Shown here piece by piece: positions 6,772 through 63,036 of a stretch of DNA of 64,000 nucleotides. Position numbers and translations under genes: made by a program. The stretch lies in IMG/VR virus record IMGVR_UViG_3300024350_000252, positions 174,048 through 238,047 of that record. The stretch is one strand, 5' to 3'. Position 1 is the first letter of the stretch, and the number at the start of each line of letters is the position of its first letter. A model generated the notes under the pieces. It made no database searches. It was not told the DNA's origin and saw only the letters and a list, made by a program, of their open reading frames with translations.

Positions 6772-7743
6772 ATGCCAACCTCGCTTAAAGCAACTAACGG
6801 TTTTAAAAGTCAGGCTTTCTGGAATCAGGAAACTAATCTAGAAAGAGGGACTATACATGTTTACACCCCAGGTAACGACTTCCAAAGTTTCCCCTGCTGC
6901 GGATGTTTCGTCGCACCTAGCTGTGGTACAGCAGTCATAGAAATCTGGGGAGCTGGCGGAAGCGGTTCTCGTATGTGCTGCTGTGGTGGCGGCATGCCAG
7001 GAAATTCAGGTGCCTATGCCAAAAAGACTATCAGAATGGGCGCAGGCTGTTATATCTATTTCTATGTAGGCATGGCCTGCGGTAACGCAGACTCTTTATG
7101 TTATAGAGGCTGTTCAGAAGCTACCTGTCTATGTTGGTTTGGTAACCAAGGACTTAGTGGCTGTATGTGCGCACAAGGTGGACAGGGCGGTATCAGTTAC
7201 TGTTCTACAGGTACTTCTATGTACTGCTGCTATGCGGCCAATAGTTGGCCAACTACAAACTTAGGCAATGGTTGCGGAATCGTCTGTAATAATTGCTCAG
7301 GATCATATCAAGCATGTGCCTACGGTGGAGACGTTAACCTCTGTAGTAGGATTTCCTGCGTGGTCTATCTAGGCTGCTTGCCCAGCTGCGTATGTAACAT
7401 CAATTGGAGCATGGCTATCCCCGCAGGACAATTTTCAAAATGCGGAGGCTATGTCAGCTACACGACAGAAAATAACCAAGACTACGCTAACTGGGTCGGT
7501 GTAGGACAACATAATCATATCATGGCACTGAATGCTGCCAGTCGTTGGCCACAACAGGGTATGCCATGGGCATACTGCTGGGGGTTTGGCGGTGGTTGCG
7601 GCTGTTACGAAAACGAAGGCTGTACAGGATTTGTTCCACCAGGACATCCTGGAATGGGACCGCTTCCATGTCCAGATGTGAGAGATCATGCTAGAAAAGG
7701 CGGCAGTGGCATGGTAAGAATTAAATTTATACCGGGAACATAA
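6772..7743 (+). CDS. Cys/Gly-rich adhesin-like protein, paralogue 1
   Basis: EIWGAGGSG..GNSGAYAKK and terminal GGSGMVRIKF, a glycine-rich phage adhesin frame; about 33 Cys in 323 aa. Confidence 0.7.
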   Translation: MPTSLKATNGFKSQAFWNQETNLERGTIHVYTPGNDFQSFPCCGCFVAPSCGTAVIEIWGAGGSGSRMCCCGGGMPGNSGAYAKKTIRMGAGCYIYFYVGMACGNADSLCYRGCSEATCLCWFGNQGLSGCMCAQGGQGGISYCSTGTSMYCCYAANSWPTTNLGNGCGIVCNNCSGSYQACAYGGDVNLCSRISCVVYLGCLPSCVCNINWSMAIPAGQFSKCGGYVSYTTENNQDYANWVGVGQHNHIMALNAASRWPQQGMPWAYCWGFGGGCGCYENEGCTGFVPPGHPGMGPLPCPDVRDHARKGGSGMVRIKFIPGT

Positions 7744-7744
7744 G

Positions 7745-8725
7745 ATGCCAACTTCGATTAGAACATGGACACAAACTAGACTAAACTTCATCGCAGATAA
7801 TGAAGAAAACTTAGAACGAGGTTCGATCTATCTGTTCAGCGGTTCTGCTGAAAGAACGAATTTTAGTAACGGTGGTTTTTGCTGGGTAGCACCTGCTACC
7901 GGACAGGCTATCGTAGACATTTGGGGAGCTGGTGGTAGCGGTGCTCGTATGTGCTGCTGCGGTGGCGGTCTTCCGGGCAATCCAGGAGCATTTGCTAGAA
8001 AATGTCTATGTATACAGTCTGGCTGCTGGATCTGCGGATTTACTGGTATGAGCTGCGGCTCACCAGATCTTTGCTTTAGAGGTTGTTCGGAATATTCAGG
8101 TATCTGCTGGCAAGCTAGCGGTACAAACGGTTGTGTATGCGCCCAAGGTGGCCGCGGAGGCACTAGCTACTGTTCTACAGGAACTTCTCTCTATTGCTGT
8201 TTTACAGCTGGTAACTTCTGTACTACACTAATCAACGCTAACTGTGGTGTTGTCTGTAACTATGGTTCAGGCACAGCCAGCTGCTGCGCACAAGCATTCG
8301 GTGGCGACATTAACTGTTTTGGCGGTTTTAGTTGTGTACTTTTCGCAGGTTGTCAACCAAGTTGTCCATGTTCAACAATCTATCACATAGCTACACCTCC
8401 ATACTATTATTCAACATGCGGTGGAGTGATCACTTACACCTCTGAAGGTGATAGCGGAGCAGCTAACTGGTCGGGCGGTACATTGACAGGATACATACAC
8501 GGTATGTCAGTCATGGGTCGTCAACCACATCACGGTACACCTCCAGAGCAATCTTGCTGGACTGGCGGTCGTACATGCGGATGTTACGAAGGTCAAGGAT
8601 GTATTCCTTTTGTACCAGCAGGATTCCCAGGACCTGGTCCTTTGCCTTGCCCAGATGTTCGCGATATGGCATTCCGTGGCGGTCATGGTGCTGTAAGAAT
8701 CAAATTCATAGCCGCAACAGAATAA
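7745..8725 (+). CDS. Cys/Gly-rich adhesin-like protein, paralogue 2
   Basis: Same motifs as paralogue 1 (WGAGGSGARMCCCGGG, CSTGTSLYCC, PCPDVRD, GGHGAVRIKF); about 33 Cys. Confidence 0.7.
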   Translation: MPTSIRTWTQTRLNFIADNEENLERGSIYLFSGSAERTNFSNGGFCWVAPATGQAIVDIWGAGGSGARMCCCGGGLPGNPGAFARKCLCIQSGCWICGFTGMSCGSPDLCFRGCSEYSGICWQASGTNGCVCAQGGRGGTSYCSTGTSLYCCFTAGNFCTTLINANCGVVCNYGSGTASCCAQAFGGDINCFGGFSCVLFAGCQPSCPCSTIYHIATPPYYYSTCGGVITYTSEGDSGAANWSGGTLTGYIHGMSVMGRQPHHGTPPEQSCWTGGRTCGCYEGQGCIPFVPAGFPGPGPLPCPDVRDMAFRGGHGAVRIKFIAATE

Positions 8726-8737
8726 GGTGAAATAAGA

Positions 8738-9721
8738 ATGGCACAATCGCTTAATAGCTTAGTAAGATTAAAAACTCCAGATAGGAATGAAGATAACCTT
8801 GAATTAGGCCAGATCTTTGTGTTCAGTCCTGGCACCATGTATACCAACTTCTGTTATAACGGTGGTTCTGGTTTCTGTTGGAAAGCTCCAGGAACAGGTA
8901 CAGCAGTTATCGAAATGTGGGGAGCTGGTGGTAGCGGTGCTAAGATGTGCTGCTGCGGCGGCGGAACTCCAGGAAATGCAGGTGCTTATGTAAGAAAAAC
9001 TATTTCGGTTAACTCTAGCACATATGTTTGCGGTTGTACCGGATTTTCCTGTGGTAACTCAGACTCATTATGCTATAGAGGTTGCTCAGATCCTTCGGGA
9101 TTAAACTGGGTGAATGGTACTGGTGCGATAGGAGCTACCAGTGGCTGCTTATGTGCCCAAGGTGGTAACGGTGGCCTTAGCTGGTGTTCTACAGGTACTT
9201 CTATGTATTGTTGTATGGGGGCTAGCGGATGGTGTACCACTTATCTAGGTACAGGTTGCGGTGTGGTCTGTAATTACTGTAATGGTATGTGGATTGCCTG
9301 CGGGTTTGGTGGAGACATTAACTGCTGCGGTCGATTCAGCTGTATTACCTATTATGGTTGTCTACCTAGCTGTATTTGTTTGTTCCAATATCATATTGCT
9401 GTACCGGCTAATTTCTTCTCATGCGGTTGCGGTAGTATGGCTAATTTCACAACAGAAAATGATAATAGGCATTCTAACTGGTCAGGCCAAGGTGTTAACC
9501 AACAGATGAACGCATTAGGAGCATTGAGTAGATCGCCGAGACAAGGTATTCCGCAAAGCTACTGCTGGCGTTCAGATCGTAAGTGTGGATGTTATAATAT
9601 GCAGGGCTGTATGAACTATAACCCACCTGGTGTGGGCGGTGTCGGACCAGCTCCGTGCCCAGACGTCCGCGATCACGCTATGCGTGGTGGAATGGGCGCA
9701 GTGCGTATTAGATTCTTTTGA
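8738..9721 (+). CDS. Cys/Gly-rich adhesin-like protein, paralogue 3
   Basis: WGAGGSGAKMCCCGGG, CSTGTSMYCC, PCPDVRD, GGMGAVRIRF; about 33 Cys. Confidence 0.7.
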   Translation: MAQSLNSLVRLKTPDRNEDNLELGQIFVFSPGTMYTNFCYNGGSGFCWKAPGTGTAVIEMWGAGGSGAKMCCCGGGTPGNAGAYVRKTISVNSSTYVCGCTGFSCGNSDSLCYRGCSDPSGLNWVNGTGAIGATSGCLCAQGGNGGLSWCSTGTSMYCCMGASGWCTTYLGTGCGVVCNYCNGMWIACGFGGDINCCGRFSCITYYGCLPSCICLFQYHIAVPANFFSCGCGSMANFTTENDNRHSNWSGQGVNQQMNALGALSRSPRQGIPQSYCWRSDRKCGCYNMQGCMNYNPPGVGGVGPAPCPDVRDHAMRGGMGAVRIRFF

Positions 9722-10474: not shown

Positions 10475-11431
10475 ATGGAACAGCAACAACCAACACAGCG
10501 ATCAAAAGCCTTTTTCTTAAATGGCGGCGCTGGCAGAGTTCTATGCTCTATCCCGGCATTAGAAAAATACGAAGAAGAATCAGGGGATAAAGATTTCATC
10601 ATAGTGTGCGAAGGTGGTACGGAAGTGTTCAAAGGACATCCTACACTAGACAGCAGAACATATGACAATTGGCACAAGAATCTTTTTGTAGAAAAAATCA
10701 AAGATCGCGATTGTGTAACACCCGAGCCTTATAGAGTTTGGGAATATTACAATCAAAAATGCGATCTAGCACAGGCATTTGATATCGAAATCAATAGAAA
10801 AGGCATTAGAGAATTACCTAAACCTAATCTAAGATTGAGCAAAGACGAATTGTTAGTAGGTAGACAGCTAATCGCCGACGTCAAGAAAAAAATCAAGAAA
10901 GAAAAAATCATAGTTTTCCAACCATTTGGCCGAGGCATAGACTATGTCGATGGTTCTTTTGTAGATCGTACTAACAGAAGCTTTGAATTTAAAGATGTAA
11001 AATCAATCATACGAAAACTTCAAGAAGCCAATTACGGTGTCGTAATGATGGGAGAAATGCGGCTCGATCTTACCAGCGAAAAACTAAAAGATGATGTAGC
11101 AGCACCAGAAAACACTACCATAAGACAGTGGGCAGCTATCATCAAATACGCAGATCATTTCTTGGGCTGTGACAGTGTGGGTCAACACCTAGCCTATATC
11201 GTAGGCAAACAATCTACTGTAGTATTCGGATCTACATATCCAGTTAACGTGTCTTACCCTAATTGTAAGTACATGAATCTTCTAGATATGGCTGAAGAAA
11301 TAAGAGAATATAGTCCTATCAGGATTACACTAGACGAACGTATTGATAGAAAACTAGAAGGAGTTATGTCCATGACTCCGGAAATTGTTGATTATGTAGT
11401 GAATGCTGTTTTAGGGAAGAAACAAAAATGA
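10475..11431 (+). CDS. GT9-like (heptosyltransferase-type, GT-B fold) glycosyltransferase
   Basis: N-terminal NGGAGRVLCSIPAL and C-terminal AAIIKYADHFLGCDSVGQHLA..STVVFGST match the GT9 pattern. Confidence 0.7.
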   Translation: MEQQQPTQRSKAFFLNGGAGRVLCSIPALEKYEEESGDKDFIIVCEGGTEVFKGHPTLDSRTYDNWHKNLFVEKIKDRDCVTPEPYRVWEYYNQKCDLAQAFDIEINRKGIRELPKPNLRLSKDELLVGRQLIADVKKKIKKEKIIVFQPFGRGIDYVDGSFVDRTNRSFEFKDVKSIIRKLQEANYGVVMMGEMRLDLTSEKLKDDVAAPENTTIRQWAAIIKYADHFLGCDSVGQHLAYIVGKQSTVVFGSTYPVNVSYPNCKYMNLLDMAEEIREYSPIRITLDERIDRKLEGVMSMTPEIVDYVVNAVLGKKQK

Positions 11432-13242
11432 GTGAAAGCAAGAATCCAATGTTAAACACTGGCTGGATCGCAGCCATAGCTAGAGGTCATAATTCAGGTA
11501 TCTGTCTATTCAAAGACGGAGAGATCGTTTTTTCTGCTGAAGAAGAAAGATTTACCAGACAGAAATACGACGGCGGTCCGTATGCTTCGATGATGAAAAT
11601 CAAAGAATACACAGACAAAATCGATTATCTAGTAGTAGCACACACACAAAAATTAAATGAAACTGCGGGTCGTGTTGACTATTCTGGTGATGATGTATAC
11701 ACAGGATTAGCTCGTAAGATGAATCTTATTGATCGAAAAGCTGATTTACATAATCATCCTCAAGTAATTGACCTTAGTTTTATGCATCATAAGCTACACG
11801 CTGCTTGTGCGTTTTATCGTTCGGGATTTGATGATGCTGTAGCATTGATTGTAGATGGTGCCGGTACTTTCATCCAGATGTCTTATGCTAACCAACCTAT
11901 ATGGGTATGGGAAGTAGAAAGTATCGTAGACTGTTCATATCCATCAAAGTTCAAAACTTTGTACAAGCATTATGGTACTAGAGAGCCTATTGCTGGTGCT
12001 ATCGAAACTAGCATTCCGTCTGATCAGTACGGTGAAGTAAATGATTTTCATGCTGCCGTATTATCAGACAGAGCAGGTATCGTTAAGACTTACGAAGCAG
12101 TCACAGAATATTGTGGGTTCAGTGCTATCGAAGCAGGCAAGACTATGGGATTGTTCCCATACGGACAGAAAAACGATAAGATTCCTCCATTGTTTGATTT
12201 TACATCTAAGGTACCCTTATCAAACAGAAATGTTATAGTTCCAGCATATCCTTCGTCTGCTAGAGTCAACGCACAACTATTTGATTATTTGGACGAAGAA
12301 ATTCCAGAAGGAGTAGATCCTACTAAATTACAAAGTCGTAGAGATTTGGCTTATGCTTGTCAAACACAGACTCAAGACCAAGTAGTGAGATTGATACGAA
12401 AAGCTGTAGAAATTAGCGGCAAGAAGAAAGTAGTGATCAGCGGTGGCTATGGTCTTAACTGTGTGGCCAATTATCATTATCTAGAAGCATTGAAAGACGG
12501 GGGTATCGAAATTTATGTAGAACCTATCTCTAACGATGCCGGAACAGCTATGGGAGCAGGACTGATGTTTTGGCATGCCATGACTGACAACACAGACATA
12601 CAGAAACTAGATACCCTTTACCTCGGACCTAAGTACGAATATACACAGGAAGAAATTGCGGAAAAGGTCAAGTACGCAGGTGGCGAGTTGACAGACGCTA
12701 CCAATGAACAAGTAGTAGAACTGCTACGTTCTAAGAATATCGTGACGATCTTCCAAGGTAGATCAGAAAACGGTCCGAGGGCCCTAGGCAATAGAAGTGT
12801 TTTATTTGATCCTACATTTCCAGATGGAAAGGATTTTGTAAACACTGTCAAACGTCGAGAATATTTCCGTCCTTTTGCGGGCAGCATTATACATGATGTT
12901 GTACATGATTGGTTTGATCTGCGCGGCATGGATGAAAGTCCTCACATGATGTATGCTGTAAACTGTAAGCCCGGAATCGCAGAAAAGATACCCAGCATCA
13001 TACACGTAGACGGTACCTGTAGAATACAGACTGTAAAACGTGAGCAAAATCCTCATTATTATGATTTGATCAAGGCTTTTTATACAGCTACAGGAATTCC
13101 TATCCTGTTTAATACCAGCTTTAATTTGGGCGGTGATCCGCTAGTAGAAACACTAGATGATGCTATAGATACCTTGATACGCAGCGATATAGAGTATCTG
13201 TACCTGCCAGAATACGGCAAACTGATCAAAATAGCCAACTGA
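11428..13242 (+). CDS. Carbamoyltransferase, NodU/CmcH/TobZ family (full length, Kae1-like plus YrdC-like domains)
   Basis: EEERFTR, HHKLHAACAF, VDGAG, GKTMGL, GGYGLNCVAN, NDAGTAMGA, GPRALGNRS, KRREYFRPFA, HVDGTCRIQTV, NTSFN; ATGA overlap with the GT gene. Confidence 0.95.
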   Translation: MSESKNPMLNTGWIAAIARGHNSGICLFKDGEIVFSAEEERFTRQKYDGGPYASMMKIKEYTDKIDYLVVAHTQKLNETAGRVDYSGDDVYTGLARKMNLIDRKADLHNHPQVIDLSFMHHKLHAACAFYRSGFDDAVALIVDGAGTFIQMSYANQPIWVWEVESIVDCSYPSKFKTLYKHYGTREPIAGAIETSIPSDQYGEVNDFHAAVLSDRAGIVKTYEAVTEYCGFSAIEAGKTMGLFPYGQKNDKIPPLFDFTSKVPLSNRNVIVPAYPSSARVNAQLFDYLDEEIPEGVDPTKLQSRRDLAYACQTQTQDQVVRLIRKAVEISGKKKVVISGGYGLNCVANYHYLEALKDGGIEIYVEPISNDAGTAMGAGLMFWHAMTDNTDIQKLDTLYLGPKYEYTQEEIAEKVKYAGGELTDATNEQVVELLRSKNIVTIFQGRSENGPRALGNRSVLFDPTFPDGKDFVNTVKRREYFRPFAGSIIHDVVHDWFDLRGMDESPHMMYAVNCKPGIAEKIPSIIHVDGTCRIQTVKREQNPHYYDLIKAFYTATGIPILFNTSFNLGGDPLVETLDDAIDTLIRSDIEYLYLPEYGKLIKIAN

Positions 13243-56151: not shown

Positions 56152-56375
56152 CAAAGAAAAAAACACAAGTCGAAAATCAAATAGAAGAACTAGCAGAAAA
56201 TGAAGAATTTATTTCGGAAAGAGATGATCTTGATATCGAAGTAAGATTAGGAGAAGATAATTCAGTCATGGTAAGGTTTACAGGATTTGAGGATGAAGAA
56301 GAAGCAGACGAGTATGCTCAATTCTTAGCTGAAAACTTACCACTATTGCTATTTGAAACTACAAGGTTACAATAA
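56148..56375 (+). CDS. Hypothetical acidic protein (75 aa)
   Basis: ATGA/TAATG-coupled to both neighbours. Confidence 0.65.
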   Translation: MTKKKTQVENQIEELAENEEFISERDDLDIEVRLGEDNSVMVRFTGFEDEEEADEYAQFLAENLPLLLFETTRLQ

Positions 56376-56959
56376 TGCCAGATATAGACATAGACTTCGC
56401 TGATAGAAACAAAGCATTAGCTGTGTTAAAACATGTGCGAGCCAGCCGCTTTGATAAAAAAGAGCAGAAATTAGTTCCGCATAATACCGGAGTCTATTTC
56501 CATTCTGTGCCTAAGTATAGTAAAGATAATCTATGTTCGTTAGAATATGAATCAGCAGAAGAATTAGGATTTTTTAAAATAGATTTTCTTAATGTAGGTA
56601 TCTATGAAGGTGTAAGAAGTGAAGAGCATCTCATACAACTAATGGAGACTGAACCACTATGGGATCTACTAGAGCAAGACGACTTTACCCAACTCCTATT
56701 CCATGTGAATGGGCATGGGTCTATTCTGAGGAAAAGCAAACCAAAGTCTATAGAGCAATTGGCAGCAGTACTAGCGATGATCCGTCCCGCGAAGAGGAAT
56801 TTGATTGGGAAGGATTGGACGACGATTATGAACGAGGTTTGGACTAAACCTGACAATGATGAGTATTATTTCAAGAAGTCACACGCTATCGCTTATGCTA
56901 CAGCAGTAGTAGTACAGATGAATCTTATCTGTGAAAATATCAGCTACGAGTTCAGTTGA
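56375..56959 (+). CDS. Minimal DNA polymerase III alpha (DnaE)-like protein, palm/finger remnants only (194 aa)
   Basis: PDIDIDF, HNTGV, KIDFLNV, LAMIRP and FKKSHAIAYA appear in the DnaE order. Confidence 0.8.
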   Translation: MPDIDIDFADRNKALAVLKHVRASRFDKKEQKLVPHNTGVYFHSVPKYSKDNLCSLEYESAEELGFFKIDFLNVGIYEGVRSEEHLIQLMETEPLWDLLEQDDFTQLLFHVNGHGSILRKSKPKSIEQLAAVLAMIRPAKRNLIGKDWTTIMNEVWTKPDNDEYYFKKSHAIAYATAVVVQMNLICENISYEFS

Positions 56960-58174: not shown

Positions 58175-59203
58175 ATGAGTCAGGTAGTCGAACTATTTAG
58201 AAAACACTTACCACCTAGAGCTAAACGTACACCCAGCGGCTGGATGAGCTTTAATGCTGTCTGTTGCCATAATAGAGGTGAAAGCCATGATGATCGCAAA
58301 AGAGGTGGGGTGTTATTCAGCGAAGGTTTTACCTATCACTGTTTTAACTGCGGATTCTCAGCTAGTTGGAAACCAGGCAGACCTGTAAGCCAAAAACTAA
58401 GAAATCTAATGACATGGTTGGGTGCTCCCGACGATGATATCAACAAAATGGTCTTTGAAGCCATGAAGACCGAAGCACCTGACTACACGCCCGAAGCACA
58501 TCCTATATTTGCTCGTTTTCCGGAGAAGCAGTTACCTGAAGGCAGCATGACTATCAGCGATTGGATAGAAGCAGAAGTAGATGACGCAGAAGTACAGGAA
58601 AAACTAGCACAGGTAGTAGACTATCTTATACAGCGTGGGTTCGATCCATTAGACAAAAACTTCTGGTGGAGTCCGGCAGATGGATTCAAAGATCGACTGG
58701 TCATACCTTTCTTGTATGACAGTAAAACTGTAGGCTATACAGCACGTAAAGTCACTAATGGTAAGCCCAAATATCTATCAGACCAAAGTCCTCATTTTGT
58801 TTTCAATATCGATTCAGTCACTGAAGATCAGAGATATGTATTTGTATGTGAAGGACCGTTTGACGCACTCAGTCTAGGCGGCATAGCATTACTACACAAC
58901 GAAATCAGTGATGAGCAAGCAAGGCTGATCAACAAGCTGAACAAGACTGTGATAGTGGTGCCTGATCAAGATGAGCCTGGTTTAAAGTTAATCGCTGATG
59001 CTGAAAAGAATGGCTACCATGTGGCATTTCCTAACTGGGAACAGGGCATAAAAGATGCTGCCGACGCTGTGGAAAAATATGGCTCTATTTTCGTCATTAC
59101 AGACGCTATCAATACCGCAGTAGCGGGTAGTGTCAAGATACAGCTATATAAGAAGAAATTAGAAAAACAGCTGAAAAATCCTACGCTACAGGGGTCGCTA
59201 TGA
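58175..59203 (+). CDS. gp61: DNA primase (Zn ribbon plus TOPRIM), T4 gp61-like
   Basis: FNAVCCH..YHCFNCG; RLVIPF..GYTAR..PKYL; VCEGPFDAL; VPDQDEPG; KDAADA. Confidence 0.9.
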   Translation: MSQVVELFRKHLPPRAKRTPSGWMSFNAVCCHNRGESHDDRKRGGVLFSEGFTYHCFNCGFSASWKPGRPVSQKLRNLMTWLGAPDDDINKMVFEAMKTEAPDYTPEAHPIFARFPEKQLPEGSMTISDWIEAEVDDAEVQEKLAQVVDYLIQRGFDPLDKNFWWSPADGFKDRLVIPFLYDSKTVGYTARKVTNGKPKYLSDQSPHFVFNIDSVTEDQRYVFVCEGPFDALSLGGIALLHNEISDEQARLINKLNKTVIVVPDQDEPGLKLIADAEKNGYHVAFPNWEQGIKDAADAVEKYGSIFVITDAINTAVAGSVKIQLYKKKLEKQLKNPTLQGSL

Positions 59204-59249: not shown

Positions 59250-59342
59250 ATGTTTAGACTGTTTAAAAAGATCGCTGACTGGTATAAGTGGAGGAAACGG
59301 ATCAAAGAACTGCGCAAGCGTGATCCGTTTATCTACAAATGA
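59250..59342 (+). CDS. 30-aa basic peptide MFRLFKKIADWYKWRKRIKELRKRDPFIYK (below the ORF-track cutoff)
   Basis: SD AGGAGAG; stop overlaps the next start (ATGA); the ELRKRDPFIYK ending is one I recall from small T4-like phage ORFs. Confidence 0.75.
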   Translation: MFRLFKKIADWYKWRKRIKELRKRDPFIYK

Positions 59343-60301
59343 TCTATTGGGGCATAAACGCACTAAATCATGGCAGCAGTATCGCTGTAGTGGGCGGTGC
59401 TAAAAATCTCACATTGATCACAGATCAAAACGATAGGCTCAGCAGCAGCATGGTCACAGAAGCGATCAATGCCAGCCACTATCGAGGACCCGAGCGTATA
59501 TTTTGGTATGAACGCCCCTGGGTCAAAAAGTTCCGTCAATTGTACGCAGGACAGTATAAAGAATTCTGGGATCGGTCTGTGCTGCCTAGGCGCCATGTCA
59601 ATGATCTAAACATACGCTATGCTCCTATCACATACACACCGCATCATGCCAGCCATGCGGCCGCAGGCTATTACACATCACCATTCAATCACTGTGCTGT
59701 GGTAGTACTAGATGCTATAGGTGAATTTGAATGCGCCAGTATCTGGGAAGGTCGGCATGGCGAATTGACCAAACTATGGAGCAAGAGCTATCCCAACAGT
59801 TTGGGTCTATTTTATTCTGCGTTCACTGAACTGTTGGGCATGAAACCCATACGTGATGAATATCTACTACAGCAGTTGAGTGAGCAGGGCAACAGATACA
59901 AGCACAGTCATCTGATCGAAAGTTACTTTGACAACAGCCTTTCTGACCCTATAGAAGCTCGTGTGAACTTCCATCTAGGTGTGCCTGATTGGCCTTTTGA
60001 AATACGTGAATCAGATCGAGCAGACATAGCTGCTGGCGTACAGGAAGTGTTTGAAAACCAAGTGATGGATGTCATGCTGCTGGCCAAACGACTGACCAAG
60101 GCAGACTGTCTAGTCTATATGGGCGGCTGTGCTTTCAACAGCTTGGCCAACCAACGTGTGGTAGAACCTCTGTTTCCCTATCGTTGGAGCACACCTAATC
60201 CGGGCGATGCTTACAGCAGCCTAGGTGCTGTGCTTTACCATACTAAACATAGAGTGATACTGGAAAAACCTCTTGTAAAACATCTAGAGGTCAGTGTATA
60301 A
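59339..60301 (+). CDS. Carbamoyltransferase, N-terminal (Kae1-like) domain only
   Basis: HHASHAAAGYY, VVLDAIGE, SLGLFYSAFT..LG, MGGCAFNS.AN, PGDAYSSLGA; ends before the YrdC-like domain. Confidence 0.85.
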   Translation: MIYWGINALNHGSSIAVVGGAKNLTLITDQNDRLSSSMVTEAINASHYRGPERIFWYERPWVKKFRQLYAGQYKEFWDRSVLPRRHVNDLNIRYAPITYTPHHASHAAAGYYTSPFNHCAVVVLDAIGEFECASIWEGRHGELTKLWSKSYPNSLGLFYSAFTELLGMKPIRDEYLLQQLSEQGNRYKHSHLIESYFDNSLSDPIEARVNFHLGVPDWPFEIRESDRADIAAGVQEVFENQVMDVMLLAKRLTKADCLVYMGGCAFNSLANQRVVEPLFPYRWSTPNPGDAYSSLGAVLYHTKHRVILEKPLVKHLEVSV

Positions 60302-60308
60302 TAATATT

Positions 60309-61736
60309 ATGATTAAGAATTACGATTACGATGTACAAAAACTATATCTAGAGATCATGCTCACAGACGCAGAGACTTTCGTGCGTTGCCAGGGCATATT
60401 TGACGCTAGCCTGTTTGATAGACGTTTACAGGAACCAGCAGAGTTTATTAAAACCTATACAGAACAGTATTCTGTGCTGCCAGATGCTGCCATGGTCAAT
60501 GCGGCCTGTAAGACAGAACTGGCACCTGTAGCAGATCTCAAAGATGGACACATAGATTGGTTCATGGATGACTTTGAACAGTTTATACGACACAAGAGCC
60601 TAGAACGTGCCATAATCAAATCCGCGGATCTGCTGGAAAAGAATGACTATGGTGCTGTGGAAGTCATGATCAAAGAAGCTGTACAGATCGGTCTTGCTCG
60701 CGACATGGGCACTGACTATTTCGCAGATCCCCGTGCTCGACTGATGGGACTCAAAGACAAGAATGGACAGGTCAGTACAGGTTGGAGCAGCCTAGATCGC
60801 AAACTGTTTGGCGGCATGAATCGCGGAGAGCTGAATATCTTCGCAGGTGGTTCAGGCGCAGGCAAAAGTCTGTTCCTAGCCAACTTGGGCGTGAACTGGG
60901 CCTTGAACGGCTTGAATGTGGTTTATCTAACGCTGGAACTTTCAGAAGCATTGGTCAGTATGCGCATCGATAGTATGCTGACAGGCATCACTACCAAAGA
61001 GATCTTCAAGCAGATCGATGACGTGGAAATGAAAGTGCGTATCATAGGCAAGAAATCCGGGCGTTTCCAAGTCAAGTACATGCCCTCAGGCAAGACTGCC
61101 AATGACATACGTGCTTATCTAAAAGAGTATGAAATACAAATGGGCCAGAAAGTGGATGTGCTACTGGTAGACTATCTGGATCTGCTCATGCCCATTTCCA
61201 AGAAGATCTCGCCCGCAGATCTCTTTATCAAGGACAAGTTTGTCAGTGAAGAACTGCGTAACTTGGCCATGGAAAAGCAGTGCGTGTTCGTCACAGCCGC
61301 ACAGTTGAATCGGGGTGCTGTAGAAGAAGTAGAGTTTGATCACAGCCATATTTCAGGTGGACTTAGCAAGATACAGACAGCAGATAACGTGTTTGGTATC
61401 TTTACGTCACGTGCCATGCGTGAGCGTGGACGCTATCAGATACAGCTGATGAAGACTCGTTCGTCTAGCGGTGTTGGACAGAAGCTGGATCTAGAGTTTG
61501 ACATAGACACTCTGCGCATCAGTGACCTGCCCGAAGATCAGCAGACTGCGGATAACAGTCCCAGAACTGGCAGCATCATACAGCAGATCAAGAGCCGAGG
61601 CAGCACAGTGGTCGATGAGGACGGTGTAGTCACAGAAGATCCCACCCGAGGCGCAGAAGTGGGCCGTAGCCGTGCCATAGTGGAAAGTACCAAGTTGAGG
61701 CAGTTTATCAACGGACTGACAGAAGATGAAGCATGA
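60309..61736 (+). CDS. gp41: Replicative DnaB-like helicase
   Basis: STGWSSLD..GG..GELNIFAGGSGAGKS, YLTLEL, LLVDYLDL, SEELRNLA, TAAQLNR, QLMKTR; ATG at 60309 preferred over GTG at 60294. Confidence 0.95.
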   Translation: MIKNYDYDVQKLYLEIMLTDAETFVRCQGIFDASLFDRRLQEPAEFIKTYTEQYSVLPDAAMVNAACKTELAPVADLKDGHIDWFMDDFEQFIRHKSLERAIIKSADLLEKNDYGAVEVMIKEAVQIGLARDMGTDYFADPRARLMGLKDKNGQVSTGWSSLDRKLFGGMNRGELNIFAGGSGAGKSLFLANLGVNWALNGLNVVYLTLELSEALVSMRIDSMLTGITTKEIFKQIDDVEMKVRIIGKKSGRFQVKYMPSGKTANDIRAYLKEYEIQMGQKVDVLLVDYLDLLMPISKKISPADLFIKDKFVSEELRNLAMEKQCVFVTAAQLNRGAVEEVEFDHSHISGGLSKIQTADNVFGIFTSRAMRERGRYQIQLMKTRSSSGVGQKLDLEFDIDTLRISDLPEDQQTADNSPRTGSIIQQIKSRGSTVVDEDGVVTEDPTRGAEVGRSRAIVESTKLRQFINGLTEDEA

Positions 61737-62346: not shown

Positions 62347-63036
62347 ATGTGGTTGAGAGAAGTCACGCCCGCAGCAGCAGAAGTACAGATACATCGCGAG
62401 CTAAATCCCCGTCTGTGGGAAAACGGCTATCTCAAAACTGACGTAGCAGAACGGCTGCTGAAAATAGCTCGTGCTTTCGAAGAGTTCGTGGGCGTGGATT
62501 TTTCAGTCAAAGACATCACACTGACGGGATCTAACGCAGGCTACACATATACAGCACACTCTGATCTAGATCTACATCTCATAGTGGAAGGTCCTTTCAC
62601 AGAAGCTCAAGCAGAACTGTACAAGGCCAAGCGACAGGTATGGCAGCAGGAGCATGATCTAGCCATAGAAGGATCGCCTGTAGAATGTTATATACAGGAC
62701 AGCAGAGAACCTCACTACAGCCAAGGACAGTATTCGATCATAAACCGTCGTTGGATACGACAGCCCTCAAAGACACGCCCCAGCTTAGATGATGCTGCTA
62801 TAGATGCTAAAACTCGTGACTTTGCCATGATAGCACTACAGGTATTACAGTCAGGTGACAGAGAGCTACTAAAGAAGTACAGAGAACGGTTAAGCAAACT
62901 GCGCAGAGCAGGACTGGCTCGTGCTGGCGAATGGAGCACAGAAAACTATGTGTTCAAGAATCTACGCAAGCTGGGCATCATCGATCAAATCGGCGAACGA
63001 GAACGCGAACTGCTGGATCAAGAGTTGAGCAACTAG
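62347..63036 (+). CDS. Pol-beta superfamily nucleotidyltransferase
   Basis: TLTGSNAGYTY..SDLDLHL (hGS..DxD) and VECYIQ; C-terminal helical domain. Confidence 0.85.
   Translation: MWLREVTPAAAEVQIHRELNPRLWENGYLKTDVAERLLKIARAFEEFVGVDFSVKDITLTGSNAGYTYTAHSDLDLHLIVEGPFTEAQAELYKAKRQVWQQEHDLAIEGSPVECYIQDSREPHYSQGQYSIINRRWIRQPSKTRPSLDDAAIDAKTRDFAMIALQVLQSGDRELLKKYRERLSKLRRAGLARAGEWSTENYVFKNLRKLGIIDQIGERERELLDQELSN

What the first reader, a model, noticed from the sequence alone, without database searches (positions are those of the whole stretch)
59339..60301. Kae1-domain-only carbamoyltransferase wedged between primase and helicase
Seen: 320 aa with the metal-binding HHxxH and D motifs but no YrdC-like domain; its stop overlaps the helicase start region; a full-length paralogue lies 46 kb away among the fibre genes. 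Known: in TobZ-type enzymes the YrdC-like domain makes carbamoyl-AMP and the Kae1-like domain transfers it; phage NodU-family enzymes can carbamoylate 5-hydroxymethylcytosine in DNA. Inference: a replisome-linked base-modification enzyme that takes its adenylate in trans (from the full-length paralogue or host TsaC/YrdC) or transfers a different acyl group.
Basis: partly seen in the sequence, partly recalled or inferred. Interest (0 to 1): 0.65.

Follow-up and report, generated by a model that had tools for sequence, protein, structure and literature searches.

The report
Half a carbamoyltransferase with a micro-protein partner
A river jumbo phage keeps only the transfer half of a two-part carbamoyltransferase, under strong selection. 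A tiny, previously unnoticed 30-residue gene always sits in front of it, and nothing found here links the enzyme to DNA modification.

Summary
ORF 59339-60301 encodes a 320-aa protein that is only the Kae1-like half of a TobZ/NodU-type carbamoyltransferase. The iron ligands (H102, H106, D125, D290) and the general base (H11) are all invariant, and there is no YrdC-like half. It lies between primase and DnaB helicase, and a 604-aa full-length paralogue (21% identity) lies 46 kb upstream.

The truncation is old. More than 7,800 protein clusters of 312-320 aa share it, synteny is kept, and dN/dS is about 0.1. On a tree the N-only proteins form one clade, sister to full-length enzymes that occupy the same primase|helicase gap. 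Cultured relatives (PA5oct, Atu_ph07) have nothing in that gap, so the position reflects an insertion site and does not by itself tie the enzyme to the replisome.

The 238-kb record holds no dCMP hydroxymethylase, TET or separate YrdC gene.

New here is a 30-aa basic micro-ORF (59250-59342) ending in an invariant RKRDPFIYK. Its stop overlaps the enzyme's start (ATGA). It precedes this enzyme subfamily in 141 distinct loci, including Ralstonia phage RsoM2USA, often beside radical-SAM and SGNH-like genes.

I read the protein as an active transferase fed an acyl-adenylate in trans. Its acceptor belongs to this cassette, possibly the micro-protein itself. Acceptor and donor are inferred.

The parts
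59250..59342 (+). Micro-ORF of 30 aa, MFRLFKKIADWYKWRKRIKELRKRDPFIYK. AGGAG lies 5 nt upstream, and its stop TGA overlaps the ATG of the next gene (ATGA at 59339-59342).
   Evidence: Read from the sequence. It is present with an invariant ...RKRDPFIYK tail upstream of the enzyme in the loci found through the enzyme and in 80 further loci found by pattern. All nucleotide changes in the tail are synonymous third-position changes. An SD-like motif precedes the micro-ORF in 110 of 141 distinct loci and the next ORF in none. No Pfam family matches it.
59339..60301 (+). The finding: a 320-aa Kae1-like-only carbamoyltransferase half (CTN), with catalytic H11, H102, H106, D125 and D290.
   Evidence: dN/dS is 0.07-0.16 in close pairs. 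More than 7,800 homologous clusters were found, and the best 120 are all 312-320 aa with PF02543 only.
58175..59203 (+). DNA primase (Toprim). It is the upstream neighbour in most loci.
   Evidence: Pfam Toprim_2 and phrog_47, E 9e-33. Synteny is shown.
60309..61736 (+). DnaB-like replicative helicase. The probable start is ATG 60309; GTG 60294 is the first possible start.
   Evidence: DnaB_C and phrog_19, E 2e-70. The start is inferred from homologues. It is 52% identical to the PA5oct helicase.
11428..13242 (+). Full-length 604-aa carbamoyltransferase paralogue (Kae1-like plus YrdC-like halves). It is the only YrdC-like domain in the record.
   Evidence: Carbam_trans_C E 2e-56 and Carbam_trans_N E 2e-26. 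It is 21% identical to CTN and is the only PF16861 match in G000. Orthologues are present in three of four other N-only records that were searched.
10475..11431 (+). GT9-like glycosyltransferase whose stop overlaps the paralogue's start. It gives context for the paralogue, not for CTN.
   Evidence: Weak Glyco_transf_9 match, E 3e-4, below the curated cut-off.

Best explanation
CTN is the acyl-transfer (Kae1-like) half of a phage-specific subfamily of TobZ/NodU-class carbamoyltransferases, the subfamily of Ralstonia phage RsoM2USA gp199. The gene is always led by a small basic micro-protein ending in RKRDPFIYK.

Shown:
- An ancestor of a large clade of freshwater jumbo phages carried micro-ORF plus full-length enzyme in the gap between primase and helicase.
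- The YrdC-like half was lost once.
- The remaining half has since been kept under strong purifying selection with its iron site, general base and nucleotide-binding glycine motifs intact.
- It has no ribosome-binding site of its own, so its translation is coupled to the micro-ORF.

Inferred:
- It is still an active metal-dependent transferase.
- It receives a ready-made acyl-adenylate from elsewhere: carbamoyl-AMP from the 604-aa paralogue, or a TsaC-type product of the host.
- It puts the acyl group on an acceptor that belongs to its own cassette, not on DNA. My favoured acceptor is the invariant C-terminal tail (Tyr-OH or Lys-NH2) of the co-translated micro-protein, by analogy with HypF carbamoylating the C-terminal residue of HypE. 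A small molecule made with the linked radical-SAM enzymes is the alternative.
For: - Domain, fold and catalytic residues.
- Conservation: more than 7,800 clusters of the same length and dN/dS about 0.1.
- One loss: on the N-domain tree the 39 N-only rows form one clade (SH-aLRT 81; its core of 34 rows has 100), sister to the full-length enzymes in the same primase/helicase position. The radical-SAM-linked full-length clades are basal.
- Linkage to the micro-ORF: all 87 loci with a complete enzyme carry it. It is also in RsoM2USA at 35% enzyme identity and in 7 of 7 MAG hits. The tail is invariant with only synonymous changes. No SD precedes the enzyme.
- Cassette partners: radical-SAM, DUF6071/SGNH, MetK and methyltransferase genes. 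N_Twi radical-SAM genes are present in the own genome and in related records.
- Donor in trans: four of five N-only records (the own record and three of four others) hold the 565-624-aa paralogue, while none of five records with a full-length enzyme at the locus has a second carbamoyltransferase.
- Precedent: carbamoyltransferases (PF02543) occur in RiPP pathways (PMC12710340).
Against: - No donor or acceptor was measured.
- One N-only record of 130 kb lacks the paralogue. All records are fragments.
- The paralogue pattern rests on a single loss event, so it has no statistical weight.
- In full-length enzymes the adenylate passes through an enclosed cavity, so supply from a paralogue that has its own Kae1-like half is structurally awkward.
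- After the loss, the N-only core dropped the conserved SERFSxxKND motif and changed the pocket helix from EYILMGMA to EYLLQQMAE on a long stem branch of 0.94. This could mean a new substrate or new chemistry.
- The micro-ORF also directly precedes other genes (DUF6071, MetK, DUF1289). That fits an operon leader as well as it fits a substrate.
Confidence: 0.45

Rival explanations
1. CTN is a replisome-associated DNA (or dNTP) base-modifying enzyme. It would carbamoylate a hydroxymethyl-pyrimidine during replication with an adenylate supplied in trans.
For: A phage NodU-family enzyme does carbamoylate 5hmC in DNA, RNA and dNTPs (PMC8670742). The gene is expressed from the same strand and block as primase and helicase, and this is kept in most loci. 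The linked radical-SAM family has weak similarity to nucleotide-acting enzymes such as MoaA, QueE and viperin. ThyX is present in the genome.
Against: There is no ThyA-type hydroxymethylase, TET/JBP or YrdC in 238 kb. The characterised enzyme is full length and depends on its C-domain. The gap between primase and helicase is empty in PA5oct and Atu_ph07 and collects unrelated insertions. The same enzyme and micro-ORF unit also sits far from replication genes, beside radical-SAM genes. The record is only 67% complete, so absence is not proven.
Confidence: 0.1
2. The micro-ORF is only a regulatory leader, and CTN's substrate is unrelated to it. The leader would act either as a simple translational-coupling ORF or as a ribosome-arrest peptide that senses a metabolite. 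CTN would then be an O-carbamoyl/acyl transferase for a sugar or small molecule, like NodU or TobZ.
For: The micro-ORF is always first. Its stop overlaps the next start whatever that gene is. The next gene never has its own SD. The peptide is 29-41 aa in all but two of 87 loci (44 and 68 aa), about the length of the ribosomal exit tunnel. The strongest conservation is in the last 9-11 residues, next to the stop.
Against: The N-terminal two thirds are also conserved: 35-47% identity, with an amphipathic basic pattern and a net charge of about +8. The unit is kept together across enzyme divergence down to 35% identity. No arrest motif of a known class was recognised. Nothing here tests stalling.
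Confidence: 0.25
3. After losing the YrdC-like half the protein changed chemistry. It would use ATP directly (ASKHA-type phosphoryl or adenylyl transfer), or carbamoyl phosphate directly, perhaps with the conserved C-terminal K314-H315 tail.
For: The stem branch is long and motifs were remodelled after the loss: SERFSxxKND deleted, HD changed to HG, and the pocket helix changed. A new conserved tail, vKHixIxV, has invariant K314 and H315. Kae1-like domains of GdmN bind ATP as well as the adenylate (PMC9633730).
Against: The full set of residues used for adenylate-dependent transfer (the HxxxH, D, D iron site and the general base) stays invariant. That is not expected if the reaction changed class. 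The tail is modelled with low confidence.
Confidence: 0.12
4. CTN is a non-catalytic remnant kept as a binding or scaffold subunit. It would hold the micro-protein or an adenylate for other cassette enzymes, as TsaB does for TsaD.
For: It has no donor-making half, and there is no YrdC in the record apart from a paralogue that one related record lacks.
Against: Catalytically dead paralogues normally lose the metal ligands. Here every one is invariant across a very large family with dN/dS about 0.1.
Confidence: 0.08

Closest known systems
TobZ / NovN / GdmN / VtdB / NodU (class III O-carbamoyltransferases)
   Same: The N-terminal Kae1-like ASKHA fold is the same (TMq 0.70-0.78). So are the iron site HxxxH...D...D, the general-base His and the GGxxxN nucleotide motif.
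   Different: The YrdC-like half that makes carbamoyl-AMP is absent. The conserved SERFSxxKND motif is deleted and the pocket helix (EYKVMGLA-type) is replaced. The gene is led by a micro-ORF.
Ralstonia jumbo phage RsoM2USA gp199 and its neighbours (gp200-203)
   Same: This is the closest cultured relative (35% identity over residues 1-315), with the same N-terminus MITWGI.... The same micro-ORF (...IRKQDPFIYK, unannotated, L001:5038-5148) lies in the cassette. An orthologous N_Twi radical-SAM gene also exists in the window's genome.
   Different: gp199 is full length (523 aa, both halves). The cassette is contiguous with radical-SAM and three DUF6071 genes and is not near primase or helicase.
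5-hydroxymethylcytosine carbamoyltransferase found by MetaGPA (eLife 2021, PMC8670742)
   Same: It is a phage-borne NodU-family enzyme and shows that such enzymes can act on nucleic acids.
   Different: It is a 63-kDa two-domain enzyme that needs ATP and carbamoyl phosphate. It is genetically paired with a thymidylate-synthase-like hydroxymethylase. None of this holds here.
Kae1 / TsaD / Qri7 with TsaC/Sua5 (t6A synthesis)
   Same: This is the precedent for a free-standing Kae1-type domain that takes a diffusible acyl-adenylate (TC-AMP) made by a separate YrdC-type protein. The fold is related (TMq 0.55-0.62).
   Different: Pfam places CTN in Carbam_trans_N, not TsaD. No TsaB, TsaE or KEOPS partners were seen. 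The acceptor is unknown.
HypF-HypE, and peptide-derived cofactor systems (PqqA/PqqE, MftA/MftC)
   Same: HypF's Kae1-like domain carbamoylates the C-terminal residue of a partner protein. pqqA and mftA are tiny first genes with invariant C-terminal residues, including Tyr, next to radical-SAM/SPASM enzymes. This resembles the micro-ORF with its linked N-terminal-SPASM radical-SAM genes.
   Different: No sequence relationship to HypE, PqqA or MftA was found. No RiPP recognition element was identified. In the window's genome the radical-SAM gene lies 143 kb away. This is an analogy, not membership.

Membership tests
Class III (TobZ/NodU/CmcH) O-carbamoyltransferases | Kae1-like N-terminal domain with an Fe site formed by HxxxH, D and D | tested here: met
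   PF02543, E 2e-26. H102/H106/D125/D290 align to GdmN H133/H137/D156/D333 and are invariant in 40 homologues. The fold matches.
Class III (TobZ/NodU/CmcH) O-carbamoyltransferases | General-base histidine in the first loop (TobZ H14, GdmN H27) | tested here: met
   H11 in GINALNHGSS is invariant. It aligns with the H of the HD motif in gp199 and in the full-length sister enzymes. The equivalence rests on alignment and was not checked in a superposed structure.
Class III (TobZ/NodU/CmcH) O-carbamoyltransferases | C-terminal YrdC-like domain that makes carbamoyl-AMP from ATP and carbamoyl phosphate | tested here: not met
   PF16861 does not match the ORF. The helicase follows 7 nt after the stop. 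The only PF16861 match in the record is the 604-aa paralogue.
Class III (TobZ/NodU/CmcH) O-carbamoyltransferases | ATP- and carbamoyl-phosphate-dependent carbamoylation of a hydroxyl acceptor | not testable with these tools
   This needs an enzyme assay.
Phage 5hmC carbamoyltransferase (MetaGPA) | Co-occurrence with a thymidylate-synthase-type dCMP hydroxymethylase | tested here: not met
   PF00303 has no match at E <= 1 in the 238-kb record, and neither does PF12851. The record is 67% complete, so the gene could lie in the missing third.
Phage 5hmC carbamoyltransferase (MetaGPA) | Two-domain enzyme of about 63 kDa whose signature residues lie in the C-domain | tested here: not met
   CTN has no C-domain.
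Kae1/TsaD/Qri7 t6A transferases | Membership of the TsaD family (PF00814) and partners TsaB/TsaE or KEOPS | tested here: not met
   Only PF02543 was reported at E <= 0.1. TsaD and Kae1 structures rank below all carbamoyltransferases.
gp199-like phage carbamoyltransferase cassette (defined here) | A micro-ORF ending ...RKRDPFIYK upstream of the enzyme: directly, or (L030, L034, L035, RsoM2USA) with another small ORF or gene between | tested here: met
   Window 59250-59342. All 87 loci with a complete enzyme carry it. It is also in RsoM2USA.
gp199-like phage carbamoyltransferase cassette (defined here) | N-terminal-twitch radical-SAM gene(s) (NF033640) in the same genome | tested here: met
   G000:C1:89071-90498 (-), 475 aa, NF033640 E 5e-106. 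It lies 143 kb from CTN and is not adjacent.
RiPP or peptide-derived cofactor pathway | Precursor peptide gene plus radical-SAM/SPASM maturase plus recognition element; modified peptide detected | tested here: inconclusive
   The short conserved peptide and the SPASM/twitch radical-SAM genes are present. No RRE was found. The 350-aa protein upstream of the micro-ORF gave only weak cyclophilin-like matches (Z about 7). No product data exist.

The most novel reading that the evidence does not exclude
The micro-protein is a ribosomally made substrate. Its invariant C-terminal DPFIYK tail would be cross-linked or otherwise modified by the N-terminal-twitch radical-SAM enzymes and then carbamoylated or acylated by the Kae1-like enzyme. 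This would amount to a widespread, purely viral pathway for a peptide-derived product, comparable to PQQ or mycofactocin. In the N-only clade the enzyme would draw its acyl-adenylate from another protein, for example host TsaC's threonylcarbamoyl-AMP.
Probability: 0.2. Interest if true: 0.85.

Novelty: new variant of a known kind. Interest (0 to 1): 0.6.

Why it matters
All characterised carbamoyltransferases of this class are two-domain enzymes that make and channel their own carbamoyl-AMP. This family is very large, consists of the transfer half alone, and is still under strong selection with a complete catalytic site. It is a natural test of whether a Kae1-like domain of this class can work with a donor made elsewhere, as TsaD does in t6A synthesis.

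The unannotated micro-protein with an invariant nine-residue tail is found in 141 distinct loci. Nearly all are viral or metagenomic contigs, plus one cultured phage and 7 MAG contigs. It defines a cassette (micro-protein, carbamoyltransferase, radical-SAM, SGNH-like) that the paper searches did not find described. RsoM2USA offers a culturable system in which to test it.

The analysis also warns against reading function from position next to replication genes in jumbo phages.

Tried and rejected
- Complex prediction of CTN with the 30-aa micro-protein gave no verdict (score 0.17, mark 0.34, after two busy refusals). It counts neither for nor against binding.
- Megablast of the locus against cultured phages found nothing.
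- The two near-complete metagenome contigs of 369 kb and 330 kb that carry N-only enzymes (L008, L009) could not be searched as whole records. Whether complete N-only genomes lack every other YrdC-like gene therefore stays open.
- The 350-aa protein that precedes the micro-ORF in radical-SAM-type loci was folded (pLDDT 88). Foldseek gave no match. VIA-align gave only middling cyclophilin-like and four-helix-bundle matches (Z 6-9), too weak to call a peptide-binding domain.
- Paper searches for DUF6071, N-terminal SPASM, jumbo phage plus carbamoyltransferase, and radical SAM plus carbamoyltransferase plus cyanophage found nothing relevant.
- I rejected 'recent truncation or pseudogene'. I also rejected 'C-domain split off as a neighbouring gene': the helicase follows directly, and tblastn found no separate C-domain in any N-only locus.
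- The large representative-protein search was not used, because the family was already clear.
Full report
**What is there.** The window is the last 64 kb of a 238,047-bp IMG/VR virus record, which CheckV rates 67% complete. Near-identical DNA occurs in riverine metagenomes. ORF 59339-60301 encodes 320 aa.

Pfam reports only Carbam_trans_N (E 2e-26). PHROGs reports 'Nol-like carbamoyltransferase', covering only the first 322 of 528 profile positions. A profile of 40 homologues hits NovN, GdmN, TobZ and VtdB in the PDB. An AlphaFold2 model (pLDDT 83.5) superposes over its whole length on their Kae1-like domains, with TMq 0.70-0.78. TsaD and Kae1 rank lower, at 0.55-0.62.

The GdmN paper (PMC9633730) names the iron ligands H133, H137, D156 and D333 and the general base H27. 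Their counterparts in this protein are H102, H106, D125, D290 and H11. All five are invariant in 40 homologues, as is the GGCxxN motif.

There is no YrdC-like half. The TAA stop at 60299-60301 is followed after 7 nt by the ATG at which helicase homologues begin. The record's only Carbam_trans_C match lies in the 604-aa paralogue at 11428-13242. That paralogue is just 21% identical to the 320-aa protein.

**The truncation is ancient and selected for.**
- The word-based protein search returned more than 7,800 clusters. The best 120 are all 312-320 aa and carry PF02543 only. They sit on contigs up to 369 kb.
- The ESM Atlas likewise shows many viral clusters with PF02543 alone.
- In 32 IMG/VR loci and 4 metagenome loci the order primase, enzyme, helicase is kept. 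Enzyme identity is 53-61%, primase 40-57% and helicase 66-77%.
- dN/dS between close pairs is 0.07-0.16.

**Where it came from.** The closest cultured relative is gp199 of Ralstonia jumbo phage RsoM2USA, at 35% identity. It is full length (523 aa, both domains).

A DNA pattern search, described below, brought in 80 more loci. Among all loci with complete enzymes, 40 enzymes are full length and 46 are N-only. Thirteen of the full-length genes lie in the same primase/helicase position.

I built a maximum-likelihood tree of the N-domains (81 different sequences, quick search, rooted on the 604-aa paralogue). It places the radical-SAM-linked full-length enzymes basally. The primase/helicase enzymes form one group (SH-aLRT 84). 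Within that group all N-only proteins form one clade of 39 rows (SH-aLRT 81). Its core of 34 rows has support of 100 and a long stem branch of 0.94. One further 'short' row, L053, is a broken full-length gene.

The YrdC-like half was therefore lost once, at this locus, long ago. After the loss the core clade deleted the otherwise conserved SERFSxxKND motif behind the third strand. It also changed HD to HG, EYILMGMA to EYLLQQMAE and PGDaGS to PGDpSS, and gained a conserved tail with invariant K314 and H315. The catalytic residues stayed.

**The position does not argue for a replisome function.** The helicase is 52% identical to that of Pseudomonas phage PA5oct and 50% to that of Agrobacterium phage Atu_ph07. 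In both phages the primase is followed directly by the helicase, and virion structural genes lie on both sides.

In the metagenomic clade the same gap also holds other insertions. L007, L008 and L013 carry a 2OG-Fe(II) oxygenase. L034 and L035 carry a NUMOD3 homing endonuclease. Other loci carry small extra ORFs. The gap is an insertion site.

There is no Sua5/YrdC (PF01300), no thymidylate-synthase-type hydroxymethylase (PF00303) and no TET/JBP (PF12851), each at E <= 1. A ThyX is present.

The published phage 5hmC carbamoyltransferase is a 63-kDa two-domain enzyme. It needs ATP and carbamoyl phosphate and is paired with a thymidylate-synthase homologue. In unmodified contigs such enzymes sit beside glycosyltransferases (PMC8670742). 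That is the setting of the 604-aa paralogue here.

The 135 nt between primase and enzyme hold a 30-aa ORF at 59250-59342, MFRLFKKIADWYKWRKRIKELRKRDPFIYK. AGGAG lies 5 nt upstream, and its TGA overlaps the enzyme's ATG.

- The ORF is 29-38 aa long with an invariant ...LRKRDPFIYK tail. It precedes the enzyme in the loci found through the enzyme, including the three where the enzyme sits beside radical-SAM genes instead of replication genes.
- Every nucleotide difference in the tail is a synonymous third-position change. The peptide itself is therefore under selection.
- The same pattern hit 7 stretches in 185,579 species genomes. All seven are MAG contigs and all are true cassettes.
- Among 50,697 cultured-phage records it hit only RsoM2USA. 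There the ORF is unannotated and lies between gp201 and gp200.
- All 87 loci with a complete enzyme of this subfamily carry the micro-ORF.
- An SD-like motif precedes the micro-ORF in 110 of 141 distinct loci. It precedes the following gene in none, so the following gene is translated by coupling.
- The peptide has a mean net charge of about +8. Its N-terminal part is 35-47% identical between loci, roughly as conserved as the enzyme.

**The wider cassette.** The gene directly after the micro-ORF is usually the carbamoyltransferase. In other loci it is a DUF6071/SGNH-like protein, DUF1289, SAM synthetase, an NTP-transferase or a small methyltransferase.

In many loci three to five paralogous radical-SAM genes with an N-terminal SPASM/twitch domain (NCBIfam N_Twi_rSAM) and a conserved 350-aa protein lie just upstream. 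RsoM2USA has the same set in compact form.

The window's own genome has one such radical-SAM gene at G000:C1:89071-90498. It is 38% identical to gp202 and lies 143 kb from the enzyme. Related records have one to five.

**How it most likely works.** The shown steps are these:
- the catalytic site is intact;
- selection is strong;
- the donor-making half is missing;
- translation is coupled to the micro-ORF;
- the enzyme is genetically linked to the micro-ORF and, more loosely, to radical-SAM and SGNH-like genes.

From these I infer an active transferase that takes an acyl-adenylate made elsewhere. Two sources are plausible.

One is the 604-aa paralogue. Four of five N-only records have it, 42-48 kb upstream. 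None of five records with a full-length enzyme at the locus has a second carbamoyltransferase. However, this pattern rests on a single loss event. One N-only record of 130 kb lacks the paralogue. And a full-length enzyme normally keeps its adenylate in an internal cavity.

The other source is a host TsaC-type enzyme, whose product is known to diffuse to TsaD.

For the acceptor I favour the micro-protein's invariant tail. The analogy is HypF acting on the C-terminus of HypE. Carbamoyltransferases also have precedent in RiPP pathways (PMC12710340). A small molecule from the radical-SAM branch is the alternative.

The main rival is that the micro-ORF is only a leader or arrest peptide, so that the acceptor is unrelated to it. 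A change of chemistry after the loss, or a non-catalytic role, is less likely given the invariant catalytic residues.

**Expression.** Contigs from six riverine metatranscriptome runs hold the region. One contig spans primase, micro-ORF and most of the enzyme. DNA carry-over in those libraries cannot be excluded, so this is weak support for transcription.

**Verdict.** The finding is real and is a conserved variant of a known enzyme class, not an artefact or a fresh pseudogene. The DNA-modification reading lacks support. The strict pairing with an unannotated micro-protein is the more interesting result.

Noticed in passing
L035:4969-6004 (also L034): A NUMOD3-type homing endonuclease (263 aa, L035:5082-5873) is inserted between the micro-ORF and the enzyme. 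Behind it, a second 44-aa ORF (L035:5870-6004) overlaps the enzyme's start. This ORF begins like a canonical radical-SAM-type carbamoyltransferase N-terminus (MNILGISAGFHDAAAA...SERYSKQKND) and ends in the micro-ORF-like tail PVIYK. It looks like a recombination scar.
   Followed up: partly
L007:6955-7566, same in L008 and L013: A 203-aa 2OG-Fe(II) oxygenase (PF13759, weak) is inserted between the N-only enzyme and the helicase. L009 has two such oxygenases further upstream.
   Followed up: partly
window 10475-13242: The 604-aa full-length carbamoyltransferase overlaps the stop of a GT9-like glycosyltransferase and lies between ORFs of 2018 and 2172 aa. This looks like a glycan-tailoring pair, not a nucleic-acid one.
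   Followed up: partly
window 6772-9721: Three consecutive ORFs of nearly equal length (323, 326 and 327 aa) have no Pfam match. They may be tandem paralogues, but I did not compare them.
   Followed up: no
G000:C1:87716-89081 (L043:5717-7082): The phage encodes a ThyX thymidylate synthase (E 8e-46). Directly after it comes a Bax-inhibitor-1 family membrane protein (PF01027, E 5e-53), an unusual gene for a phage.
   Followed up: no
window 62347-63036: A 229-aa protein with a Pol-beta-type nucleotidyltransferase domain (NTP_transf_2, 23.3 bits, cut-off 21) is conserved downstream of the helicase in many related loci.
   Followed up: no
window 56375-56959: A 194-aa conserved ORF has weak matches to the DNA polymerase III alpha finger domain. 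A 164-aa gene at the corresponding position in Atu_ph07 (not compared) is annotated 'DNA polymerase'. It may be a piece of a split polymerase.
   Followed up: no
window 60273-60302: A sigma-70-like site (TTGTAA, 18 nt, TATAAT; 10 of 12 matches) lies across the enzyme's last codons, just ahead of the helicase start. The number of such sites in the region is no higher than in shuffled sequence.
   Followed up: no
L114:4543-5622 and 17 homologues: A conserved 350-aa protein lies directly upstream of the micro-ORF in radical-SAM-type loci. It has no Pfam family. A confident AF2 model (pLDDT 88) shows a beta-barrel with weak cyclophilin-like matches (Z about 7) and an inserted four-helix bundle. 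It is absent from the window's genome.
   Followed up: partly
L169 and L173: One Haliscomenobacter MAG carries two copies of the full cassette on contigs of 148 kb and 183 kb. These may be mis-binned jumbo-phage contigs or a cellular home of the cassette.
   Followed up: no
G002:C1:236224-241257: A related N-only phage record has four N_Twi radical-SAM genes in tandem, about 143 kb from its enzyme. The single copy in the window's genome lies at the same distance.
   Followed up: no
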